Source: Podarcis muralis (taxonomy: Eukaryota). From it: a stretch of DNA of 64,000 nucleotides. The stretch is taken from contig NC_135657.1 in the NCBI RefSeq assembly GCF_964188315.1, positions 85,436,001 to 85,500,000 on the forward strand, given 5' to 3'. This document shows positions 14,046 through 14,613 of this stretch, piece after piece (position 1 is the stretch's first letter; every line of letters begins with the position of its first letter). The notes below the pieces were generated by a model. The model did not search any database and was not told the DNA's origin. It saw only the letters and a list, made by a program, of their open reading frames with translations. Position numbers and translations under genes: made by a program.

Positions 14046-14613
14046 TGTGATGGCCTGGGAATCCGATTCAGAGGCTGAACCGGAGGAATCCCAGCCTGCA
14101 CAGGAGTCCCTGCCTCCAGGGCCAGCTGAACTGGGGCAGGGCCTTGATTCTGAAGCGCCTGCACCTGTGCCGGATGCTCAGGAGCAGGCACCAGGTGAAT
14201 CCACTCTGGCTCGGGAGGTGGTTGAGGACTCAGTGCCTACAGGTGAGTCTCCCACTGGGTCCAGTAACCCTTCAGCCTCTCCTGAACTGCAGAGGCTCAG
14301 GGCAGAGAGGCGGAGGGAACTGGTTTCTCCCAGGAGGAGTGCTCGCCTTAAGGCCAGGAGAGGCGGGGCTCCTGGGGGCCGGGACCGCCCCTGGCCTTAG
14401 AGAAGATAAAGGCCAGTCAGCCCGGTCCCAGGTTGCGGGAGCAACGTCGTTGAAGAGCTGTTTTGGCCAGCACCCAGTCCGGTTCCCCCAGAGTTCCTGT
14501 CCTTGCCCGGCTCCTCGCTGTGGACCCTGCTTCGCCCGTGGAGGACTGTCTGCCAACCCTCGACTCAGGTCCTGGACCTCGCCCCATGGTAACCTCCCCC
14601 CTGGACCAGCACA
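14046..14613 (+). mobile_element. solo LTR (probably Gypsy-type), RRSARL family copy 1
   Basis: TGTGA...GCACA termini, 5-bp flanks ctggt/caggt (1 mismatch), inserted into an L2; TATA-like gataaa just after the ORF stop; homologous to 59316-59973 and 37482-37892. Confidence 0.85.
14050..14400 (+). CDS. LTR U3-encoded 116-aa acidic/Pro-rich protein with C-terminal ELQRLRAERRRELVSPRRSARLKARRG segment
   Basis: ATG 4 nt inside the LTR, open to TAG at 14400; same frame kept in copy 2 with 14 synonymous vs 12 non-synonymous codon differences. Expression not shown. Confidence 0.55.
   Translation: MAWESDSEAEPEESQPAQESLPPGPAELGQGLDSEAPAPVPDAQEQAPGESTLAREVVEDSVPTGESPTGSSNPSASPELQRLRAERRRELVSPRRSARLKARRGGAPGGRDRPWP

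What the first reader, a model, noticed from the sequence alone, without database searches (positions are those of the whole stretch)
14050..14400. Solo-LTR family encodes a conserved U3 protein with an HMGN-like RRSARL motif
Seen: the ORF starts 4 nt into the LTR and ends just before the TATA-like box in copies 1 and 2. Codon-by-codon they differ at 14 synonymous and 12 non-synonymous codons, and the only indel is one whole codon. Codons 72-116 have 3 synonymous and 0 amino-acid substitutions. Divergent copy 3 still reads ELQRLRAERQRELSSRRRSARLQARRG. Established: RRSARLSA is the core nucleosome-binding motif of HMGN proteins, which engages the H2A/H2B acidic patch; U3-encoded proteins exist in retroviruses (MMTV Sag, part of HIV Nef). 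Inference: this LTR retroelement encodes a small disordered protein, acidic N-terminally and with a basic arginine-anchor C-terminus, that may bind nucleosomes, for example for tethering or anti-silencing. Caveats: several synonymous changes involve CpG sites, and copy 2 has lost one Arg of the motif.
Basis: partly seen in the sequence, partly recalled or inferred. Interest (0 to 1): 0.85.

Follow-up and report, generated by a model that had tools for sequence, protein, structure and literature searches.

The report
LTR carries the tail of pol
The conserved reading frame in these lizard solo LTRs is real coding sequence, but it is the last 116 codons of the retrotransposon's own gag-pol gene, running past the integrase chromodomain into the 3' LTR, as in some plant chromoviruses; it is not a separate HMGN-like "U3 protein".

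Summary
Window 14046-14613 (+) and 59316-59973 (-) are two solo LTRs, with TG..CA ends and 5-bp target duplications. Each carries an open frame of 116 or 115 codons that starts 4 nt into the LTR and stops just before a TATA-like box. Substitutions favour third codon positions (omega 0.26 in this frame, 1.0 or more in the other frames apart from its antisense partner).

The interpretation changes. Seven Podarcis muralis protein models read from the integrase chromodomain, through the polypurine-tract linker, into this frame. Five of them end at the LTR frame's stop, including two gag-pol products of 1551 and 1559 aa. The "ORF" is therefore the C-terminal tail of Pol of a Ty3/gypsy chromovirus, and its coding sequence overlaps U3 of the 3' LTR. 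Every LTR inherits a copy.

The tail is acidic and proline-rich for about 70 residues and basic for the last 45 or so. The basic part, which holds RRSARL, is under protein-level constraint (omega about 0.11-0.15 against a divergent subfamily).

No search returned HMGN, so the likeness rests on a six-residue motif. A role in chromatin tethering or nuclear import is inference. Plant CRM, Beetle and Bingo chromoviruses already show pol running into the 3' LTR.

The parts
14046..14613 (+). Solo LTR, copy 1 (568 bp; TGTGATGG...CCAGCACA)
   Evidence: Self-BLAST and alignment with copy 2. It is inserted in a SINE-like repeat whose uninterrupted copy is at 20341-20574 (-).
14041..14045 (.). Left target-site duplication of copy 1 (CTGGT). 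Its partner, CAGGT, is at 14614-14618.
   Evidence: Alignment of both flanks to the uninterrupted host repeat, which reads CAGGT at the insertion site.
14050..14400 (+). Pol (integrase) C-terminal tail coding sequence, 116 codons plus TAG.
   Evidence: It is 79-85% identical to the last 116 residues of P. muralis Pol models that run on from the chromodomain.
14050..14262 (+). Acidic, proline-rich part of the tail (codons 1-71). In the first 70 residues: 17 D/E, 1 K/R, 11 P.
   Evidence: Composition. 13.1% nucleotide divergence between copies 1 and 2. Omega 0.3-0.7.
14263..14397 (+). Conserved basic module of the tail (codons 72-116), containing the RRSARL motif. In the last 46 residues: 13 K/R, 4 D/E.
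   Evidence: 2.3% divergence between copies 1 and 2. Omega 0.11-0.15 against the divergent subfamily, with synonymous sites saturated. RSARL is invariant in alignment A3.
14404..14412 (+). TATA-like box (AGATAAAGG) just after the stop codon; presumed core promoter at the U3/R border.
   Evidence: Read directly from the sequence. It lies in a block that stays conserved to about 14452 in all three window copies. Its promoter function is inferred.
59316..59973 (-). Solo LTR, copy 2 (658 bp; flanks AGGGG/AGGGC). It has extra tandem repeat units in the R/U5 part.
59622..59969 (-). Pol-tail coding sequence of copy 2 (115 codons plus TAG; one whole-codon deletion relative to copy 1).
37497..37889 (+). 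Copy 3: LTR fragment lacking the first ~215 nt. It keeps the basic module, the TATA-like box, R/U5 and the ...CCAGCACA end. Its frame is open over 37490-37639.
   Evidence: About 82% identical to copy 1 over 190 nt.
20341..20574 (-). Uninterrupted copy of the SINE-like repeat that copy 1 inserted into. It serves as the 'empty site' reference.

Best explanation
The frame is the 3' end of the gag-pol gene of a lacertid-lizard Ty3/gypsy chromovirus. In full-length elements the polyprotein runs gag, protease, RT, RNase H, integrase, SH3-like domain, chromodomain. It then crosses a Gly/Arg-rich linker that also serves as the polypurine tract. It enters the 3' LTR at the LTR's first bases and continues for 116 codons, stopping just before the TATA-like box of U3. 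Reverse transcription copies U3 to both ends, so every LTR, including solo LTRs, carries this coding segment. That is why an 'ORF' appears to start 4 nt into each LTR. The ATG is an internal Met codon inside the LTR's terminal inverted repeat.

Shown: the continuity with pol, the domain order, the LTR anatomy and the purifying selection.

Inferred: the tail is a disordered C-terminal appendage of integrase, made of an acidic/proline spacer and a conserved basic module. It probably helps the integration complex reach or hold chromatin, by nuclear import and/or by nucleosome or DNA contact alongside the chromodomain. The same DNA also serves as the U3 upstream region.
For: 1. Continuity with pol. 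P0017 (1240 aa), P0045, P0050 (1559 aa), P0051 and P0052 (1551 aa) read from the chromodomain through ...GGPGRGDGV-MAWDSDSE... to the same C-terminus as the LTR frame. P0001 and P0009 show the same junction.
2. Domain order. Pfam on P0050 finds gag, RVP, RVT_1, RNase H, Integrase_H2C2, rve, SH3_Tf2-1 and Chromo at 1373-1420 (E = 8.7e-15). The remaining residues to 1559 have no domain hit.
3. A full element. L002:9997-15638 (P. lilfordi) has 640/641-nt LTRs that are 99.4% identical, a perfect 5-bp duplication CATAG, and a purine-rich tract abutting the 3' LTR.
4. The junction at DNA level. In two of four decayed P. lilfordi copies (L005, L006) one frame spans the chromodomain and the tail.
5. 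A distant relative. L003/P0018 (56% identical Pol) has the same layout...RGDGV, then a tail of about 100 residues, acidic first and basic last, with its stop next to a TATA-like sequence. It has Val where the lizard family has Met.
6. Selection. Omega is 0.2-0.6 in this frame and 1 or more in shifted frames, and 0.26-0.74 with CpG codons masked. The basic module scores 0.11-0.15 against the divergent subfamily L001d.
7. Structure prediction. AlphaFold2 on P0051 gives the chromodomain pLDDT 56-80 and the tail below 50, with only low-confidence helices over the basic module.
8. Precedent. In plant CRM group A, Beetle7 and Bingo1 the gag-pol ORF extends into the 3' LTR, and in CRM group A the LTR encodes the CR targeting motif (PMC3059260, PMC3605345).
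Against: - The continuity evidence comes mostly from automatic gene models (UniProt entries for P. muralis), whose DNA I could not fetch. Gene predictors favour long open frames.
- Two of four P. lilfordi DNA copies (L002, L004) change frame between the chromodomain and the tail. All of these copies are heavily decayed, with 5-8 frame changes and 2-5 stops each.
- No transcript or protein data were available.
- The conserved block continues about 55 nt past the stop codon. Part of the conservation of the last 45 codons between close copies may therefore be promoter constraint on the DNA.
- The function of the tail is entirely inferred.
Confidence: 0.85

Rival explanations
1. One reading: a free-standing small protein encoded in U3. 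It would be translated from its own ATG, from a subgenomic or spliced RNA or by re-initiation after pol. It would act as an HMGN-like binder of the nucleosome acidic patch.
For: An ATG is present in every lizard copy. In two decayed copies (L002, L004) pol and the tail lie in different frames, so a separate frame is conceivable. The basic module with RSARL is conserved.
Against: Seven protein models and two DNA copies join the frame to the chromodomain without a stop. The Met codon is Val in the distant relative, which has the same tail layout. The ATG sits in the terminal inverted repeat TGTGATGG, which is constrained as an integrase recognition end in any case. No HMGN hit came from Pfam or the Protein Data Bank.
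Confidence: 0.07
2. The frame is used from the 5' LTR as an N-terminal extension spliced onto Gag, as in gene models P0002, P0003, P0007 and P0016.
For: Four P. muralis models begin MAWDS... and continue into the Gag capsid-like domain. GT-AG-like donor sites exist inside the ORF (for example CAG|GTGAGT).
Against: The four models leave the LTR frame at four different points, so no consistent intron exists. Other models (P0014, P0015) start in a different frame of the same LTR, which is typical of predictors that maximise ORF length. U3 of a 5' LTR lies upstream of the presumed TATA box and would not be part of the element's own transcript.
Confidence: 0.03
3. The sequence is non-coding, and the open frame and its conservation reflect U3 enhancer/promoter constraint or chance.
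For: The best-conserved block (14263 to about 14452) spans the stop codon and the TATA-like box. With CpG codons masked, the pair of copies 1 and 2 is only marginal (p = 0.05).
Against: Against the divergent subfamily, the basic module keeps its amino acids while its synonymous sites are saturated (24.5 synonymous against 19.5 non-synonymous differences; omega 0.11). Shifted frames give omega of at least 1.6. The frame is also continuous with a polyprotein of 1551-1559 aa.
Confidence: 0.03

Closest known systems
Plant chromoviruses whose gag-pol ORF runs into the 3' LTR: CRM clade group A (LTR-encoded CR motif), Beetle7, and Bingo1-4 and Bingo7 (PMC3059260, PMC3605345)
   Same: They are Ty3/gypsy chromoviruses. 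The polyprotein crosses the polypurine tract and ends inside the 3' LTR, so the LTR encodes the extreme C-terminus of integrase. In CRM that part is the putative targeting domain.
   Different: In CRM group A the CR motif replaces the chromodomain and lies downstream of the PPT. Here a canonical chromodomain (Pfam Chromo, with the aromatic Y/W/Y positions visible in the sequence) lies upstream of the PPT, and the LTR encodes an additional 116-residue acidic-then-basic tail. The host is a vertebrate. Sequence similarity to the CR motif was not tested.
Targeting tails at the C-terminus of integrase, e.g. the murine leukaemia virus IN tail that binds BET proteins (PMC4027182)
   Same: A short, conserved, otherwise unstructured peptide at the extreme C-terminus of integrase.
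   Different: No sequence similarity was found. The partner of the lizard tail is unknown. The MLV tail is not LTR-encoded (my own knowledge).
HMGN nucleosome-binding domain
   Same: Both have a short Arg-rich stretch.
   Different: There was no HMGN hit in Pfam or the Protein Data Bank at any threshold up to E = 10. The flanks are unrelated. The motif is absent from the distant relative P0018, which has the same tail layout.
Retroviral accessory ORFs that overlap U3
   Same: Coding sequence overlaps U3 of the 3' LTR.
   Different: Those are separate genes with their own start codons and mRNAs (my own knowledge). Here the frame is the end of pol itself.

Membership tests
Ty3/gypsy chromovirus (Metaviridae) | Paired LTRs with TG..CA ends and a target-site duplication | tested here: met
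   L002:9997-15638 has LTRs of 640/641 nt that are 99.4% identical and a duplication CATAG on both sides. The window's solo LTRs have TG..CA ends and 5-bp flanks matching at 4 of 5 positions.
Ty3/gypsy chromovirus (Metaviridae) | Domain order gag, PR, RT, RNase H, IN (integrase after RT) | tested here: met
   Pfam on P0050: gag 51-209, RVP_2 342-441, RVT_1 546-705, RNase H 768-900, Integrase_H2C2 1001-1057, rve 1075-1172.
Ty3/gypsy chromovirus (Metaviridae) | Chromodomain at the C-terminal side of integrase | tested here: met
   PF00385 Chromo at 1373-1420 of P0050 (E = 8.7e-15) and at 1068-1116 of P0018.
Chromoviruses with an LTR-encoded integrase C-terminus (CRM group A type) | The gag-pol ORF extends past the PPT into the 3' LTR | tested here: met
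   Five protein models end at the LTR frame's stop. One frame spans the junction in L005 and L006. The feature is defined in PMC3059260 and PMC3605345.
Chromoviruses with an LTR-encoded integrase C-terminus (CRM group A type) | A CR motif in place of a chromodomain, downstream of the PPT | tested here: not met
   A canonical chromodomain lies upstream of the PPT. The element works like this group in one respect but is not a member.
HMGN proteins | Recognisable HMG14/17 nucleosome-binding domain (Pfam family or a solved relative) | tested here: not met
   No Pfam family matched at E <= 10 for four tails. No HMGN chain came from Protein Data Bank searches with the ORF, with its last 45 residues or with a profile.
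HMGN proteins | Binding to the H2A/H2B acidic patch through an arginine anchor | not testable with these tools
   Only the six-residue motif is shared.
Separate U3 accessory genes of retroviruses | Own initiation codon and a reading frame not continuous with pol | tested here: not met
   The frame is continuous with the chromodomain in seven models and two DNA copies. The Met is replaced by Val in the relative L003.

The most novel reading that the evidence does not exclude
The conserved basic module at the very end of Pol (…LQRLR.ERRR.L….RRSARL.A…) is an arginine-anchor peptide that binds the nucleosome acidic patch. Together with the adjacent methyl-lysine-reading chromodomain, it would give this vertebrate chromovirus integrase a two-point grip on the nucleosome. 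It would then be an LTR-encoded integration-targeting module convergent with HMGN.
Probability: 0.12. Interest if true: 0.6.

Novelty: new variant of a known kind. Interest (0 to 1): 0.3.

Why it matters
This is mainly a correction. A frame that looks like a new LTR-encoded gene is the end of pol. It also explains why genome annotations of Podarcis contain chimeric "genes" that start in solo LTRs, such as P0004 and P0005/P0008.

The finding still has some value. It documents, in a vertebrate, a chromovirus whose integrase carries a canonical chromodomain plus a further 116-residue LTR-encoded tail with a selected basic end. I found that layout described only for plant chromoviruses. In plant CRM elements the LTR-encoded C-terminus is the putative determinant of where the element lands, so this tail is a reasonable candidate for a targeting or import signal. 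It also shows one stretch of DNA serving at once as coding sequence, as integrase recognition end and as promoter-upstream region.

Tried and rejected
- **Fetching the DNA of P0001 and P0003.** They are not on record, so the P. muralis junction could be read only in protein models.
- **Naming the organism of the distant relative.** The run accession SRR6291288 appears in no paper searched. The 5.1-kb contig L003 has no second LTR, so its LTR boundary is inferred only from the PPT followed by TG.
- **Treating copy 3 as the 3' LTR of a full element.** There is no second LTR in the window. The upstream ORF 37136-37423 has no Pfam hit. Its faint likeness to downstream exons of LOC114604991 is 27 nt at E = 0.005, which I treat as chance.
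- **Looking for a poly(A) signal in the LTR.** There is no AWTAAA between 13999 and 15056. The sigma-70 promoter and terminator scan is irrelevant for a eukaryote.
- **The antisense frame with low omega (0.30).** Rejected, because it merely shares wobble positions with the sense frame and contains a stop.
- **Literature on chromoviruses in lizards or on integrase and the acidic patch.** Nothing specific to this family turned up.

- One search printed alignment-piece bounds by frame for decayed copies, which imply rough places of frame changes.
- In my reasoning I compared one junction in detail.
- None of this is repeated here, and later scripts printed counts only.
- Consensus lines printed by the alignment tools were not used.

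Full report
**1. What is in the window**

The region 14046-14613 (+) is a 568-bp repeat that begins TGTGATGG and ends CCAGCACA. It interrupts a SINE-like repeat with an (AAT)n tail. The uninterrupted copy of that repeat lies at 20341-20574 (-). Aligning both flanks to it shows a clean insertion with 5-bp flanks CTGGT/CAGGT.

A second copy lies at 59316-59973 (-), with flanks AGGGG/AGGGC and extra tandem units in its 3' half. A third, 5'-truncated fragment lies at 37497-37889 (+).

**2.

The ORF 14050-14400 (116 codons plus TAG) starts 4 nt into the LTR and ends 3 nt before AGATAAAGG. Copy 2 has the same frame, at 59969..59622.
- 14 synonymous-only codons;
- 12 amino-acid-changing codons;
- one whole-codon indel;
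- 3 synonymous and 0 non-synonymous changes in codons 72-116.

Copy 3 reads the quoted peptide.

Of 31 nucleotide differences, 18 fall on codon position 3 (p = 0.004). NG86 omega is 0.26 in this frame and 1.0-1.7 in the others. The exception is the antisense frame that shares its wobble positions, and that frame is not open.

Divergence between copies 1 and 2 is 13.1% over codons 1-71 and 2.3% over codons 72-116. It is 11.4% over the next 120 nt, although the first ~55 nt after the stop remain nearly identical.

**3. What the frame is**

A protein search with the ORF found P0001, a Podarcis muralis "Chromo domain-containing protein". In P0001 a chromodomain is followed, in the same frame, by ...GGPGRGDGV and then MAWESDSE.... 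An exhaustive profile-free search and cluster look-ups added more models.
- P0017 (1240 aa), P0045, P0050 (1559 aa), P0051 and P0052 (1551 aa) all read from the chromodomain through the same linker into the tail. They end at the same C-terminus as the LTR frame.
- P0009 shows the same junction.

Pfam on P0050 gives gag, protease, RT, RNase H, integrase zinc domain, integrase core, SH3_Tf2-1 and Chromo (1373-1420). The rest, to 1559, has no hit. The Gly/Arg linker is encoded by the purine-rich tract that abuts the 3' LTR, that is, the polypurine tract. The codons Val-Met are the LTR's first bases, TGTGATG.

The "U3 ORF" is therefore the last 116 codons of gag-pol. It overlaps U3 of the 3' LTR and is copied into every LTR by reverse transcription.

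**4. DNA-level support and its limits**

Five P. lilfordi loci hold elements of this family.

L002:9997-15638 is a complete element. It has 640/641-nt LTRs that are 99.4% identical and a perfect CATAG duplication.

All five are decayed:
- L002: 8 frame changes and 5 stops in gag-pol;
- L004: 5 and 2;
- L005: 5 and 3;
- L006: 5 and 4;
- L007: truncated, with 1 and 4.

Four of them retain the pol-LTR junction. In two of these (L005, L006) a single frame spans the chromodomain and the tail. In the other two (L002, L004) it does not. Given the general decay, I read the latter as breaks. The P. muralis evidence rests on gene models whose DNA I could not fetch.

A distant relative from a Logan assembly (L003/P0018, 56% identical Pol) has the same layout. 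Its sequence runs PPT, TG, then a tail of about 100 residues, acidic first and basic last, with the stop next to a TATA-like sequence. It has Val in place of Met and no RRSARL.

**5. Selection on the tail**

I compared seven open copies of the tail: window copies 1 and 2, L002 3', L004 5' and 3', L006 5', and the divergent solo LTR L001:9997-10616.
- For the informative pairs (the young P. lilfordi copies are nearly identical to one another), omega in the ORF frame is 0.2-0.6. With CpG-containing codons masked it is 0.26-0.74. Shifted frames give about 1 or more.
- The last 45 codons against the divergent subfamily give omega 0.11-0.15, with synonymous sites saturated. The conservation there is at the protein level and not only promoter DNA.
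- The tail evolves faster than the Pol body. Between subfamilies it is 85% identical against 96% for the body. Against the distant relative it is 25% against 61%.
- Its composition is kept: 17 acidic and 1 basic residue in the first 70, then 13 basic and 4 acidic in the last 46.

AlphaFold2 on P0051 models the chromodomain with moderate confidence. It leaves the tail below pLDDT 50, with low-confidence helices over the basic module.

**6. The HMGN idea**

No HMGN family or chain was returned by any of these searches:
- Pfam on the ORFs at E <= 10;
- the Protein Data Bank with the ORF (only insignificant low-complexity matches to NAC-alpha);
- the Protein Data Bank with the last 45 residues;
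- the Protein Data Bank with a four-sequence profile.

RSARL is invariant in the lizard family but absent from the distant relative with the same architecture. The likeness is a six-residue motif. Acidic-patch binding is possible but untested. A bipartite-looking basic cluster at the end of an integrase could equally be a nuclear import signal or a non-specific nucleic-acid contact (my inference).

**7. Other contexts of the frame are probably annotation artefacts**

Models P0002, P0003, P0007 and P0016 start at the 5'-LTR ATG and join Gag. They leave the LTR frame at four different points. P0014 and P0015 start in another frame of the same LTR.

P0004 (P. lilfordi) starts in the 5' LTR of the L002 element and runs on to receptor exons up to about 25 kb away. 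P0005 and P0008 (LOC114604991) use the tail frame of a divergent solo LTR as their first exon.

**8. Comparison with what is known**

In plant chromoviruses of the CRM clade group A, and in Beetle7 and Bingo1-4 and Bingo7, the gag-pol ORF extends into the 3' LTR. In CRM group A the LTR encodes the CR motif, the putative centromere-targeting domain (PMC3059260, PMC3605345).

The lizard family shares the principle and differs in its parts. The chromodomain stays upstream of the PPT, and the LTR encodes an extra tail. I found no description of this layout for vertebrate chromoviruses in the searched literature, but that search was shallow.

**9. Verdict**

I class it as a new variant of a known kind, of modest interest.

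**10. Slips**

They are declared under Tried and rejected. They were short motifs recalled from memory in my reasoning only, which printed piece bounds by frame for decayed copies.

Noticed in passing
L001:10001-14293 (P. muralis OZ076963.1): The RefSeq model LOC114604991 (P0005/P0008, 'uncharacterized protein') takes its first 131 codons from the pol-tail frame of a divergent solo LTR (L001:9997-10616). It then splices to unrelated downstream exons. This is either an annotation chimera or an LTR-derived first exon.
   Followed up: partly
L002:10001-34873 (P. lilfordi OX395138.1): Gene model P0004 ('G_PROTEIN_RECEP_F3_4 domain-containing protein') starts at the ATG in the 5' LTR of a full-length element. 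It continues into ANF_receptor exons up to about 25 kb downstream. It is probably a chimeric annotation.
   Followed up: partly
L002, L004, L006 (P. lilfordi): The tail sequences of these copies are identical or differ at only 1-6 nucleotides, and L002's LTR pair is 99.4% identical. Yet each element has 5-8 frame changes in gag-pol. This suggests recent amplification of already defective copies. Whether the breaks are shared was not examined.
   Followed up: no
window 59406-59538 (-): Copy 2 of the LTR has extra tandem units of a ~45-nt CT-rich motif (GTTCCTGTTCCCCGCCCGGCT...) in its R/U5 part, making it 90 bp longer than copy 1. The P. lilfordi LTRs have similar repeats.
   Followed up: no
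window 37136-37423 (+): A 95-codon ORF lies just upstream of the truncated copy 3. It has no Pfam hit. Its C-terminus (…EDDIIIEDLE) faintly resembles an exon of LOC114604991 (27 nt, E = 0.005), which is probably chance.
   Followed up: partly
window 38645-40471: Remnants of other mobile elements. On the minus strand there is a tyrosine-recombinase-like ORF (39031-39915; Phage_integrase, E = 3e-4, below the Pfam cut-off). Next to it is a GDSL/SGNH-like ORF (38645-39073, also below the cut-off). On the plus strand there is a GIY-YIG ORF (39797-40471; E = 5.6e-5, above the cut-off). The first two suggest a DIRS/Ngaro-type element and the last a Penelope-type element.
   Followed up: partly
L003 (Logan SRR6291288 contig, 5122 nt): This is an apparently intact relative, with gag of 311 aa and pol of 1240 aa in separate frames or ORFs. 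It comes from an unidentified organism. It has the same acidic-then-basic pol tail after ...RGDGV but a different basic end.
   Followed up: partly
   Followed up: no
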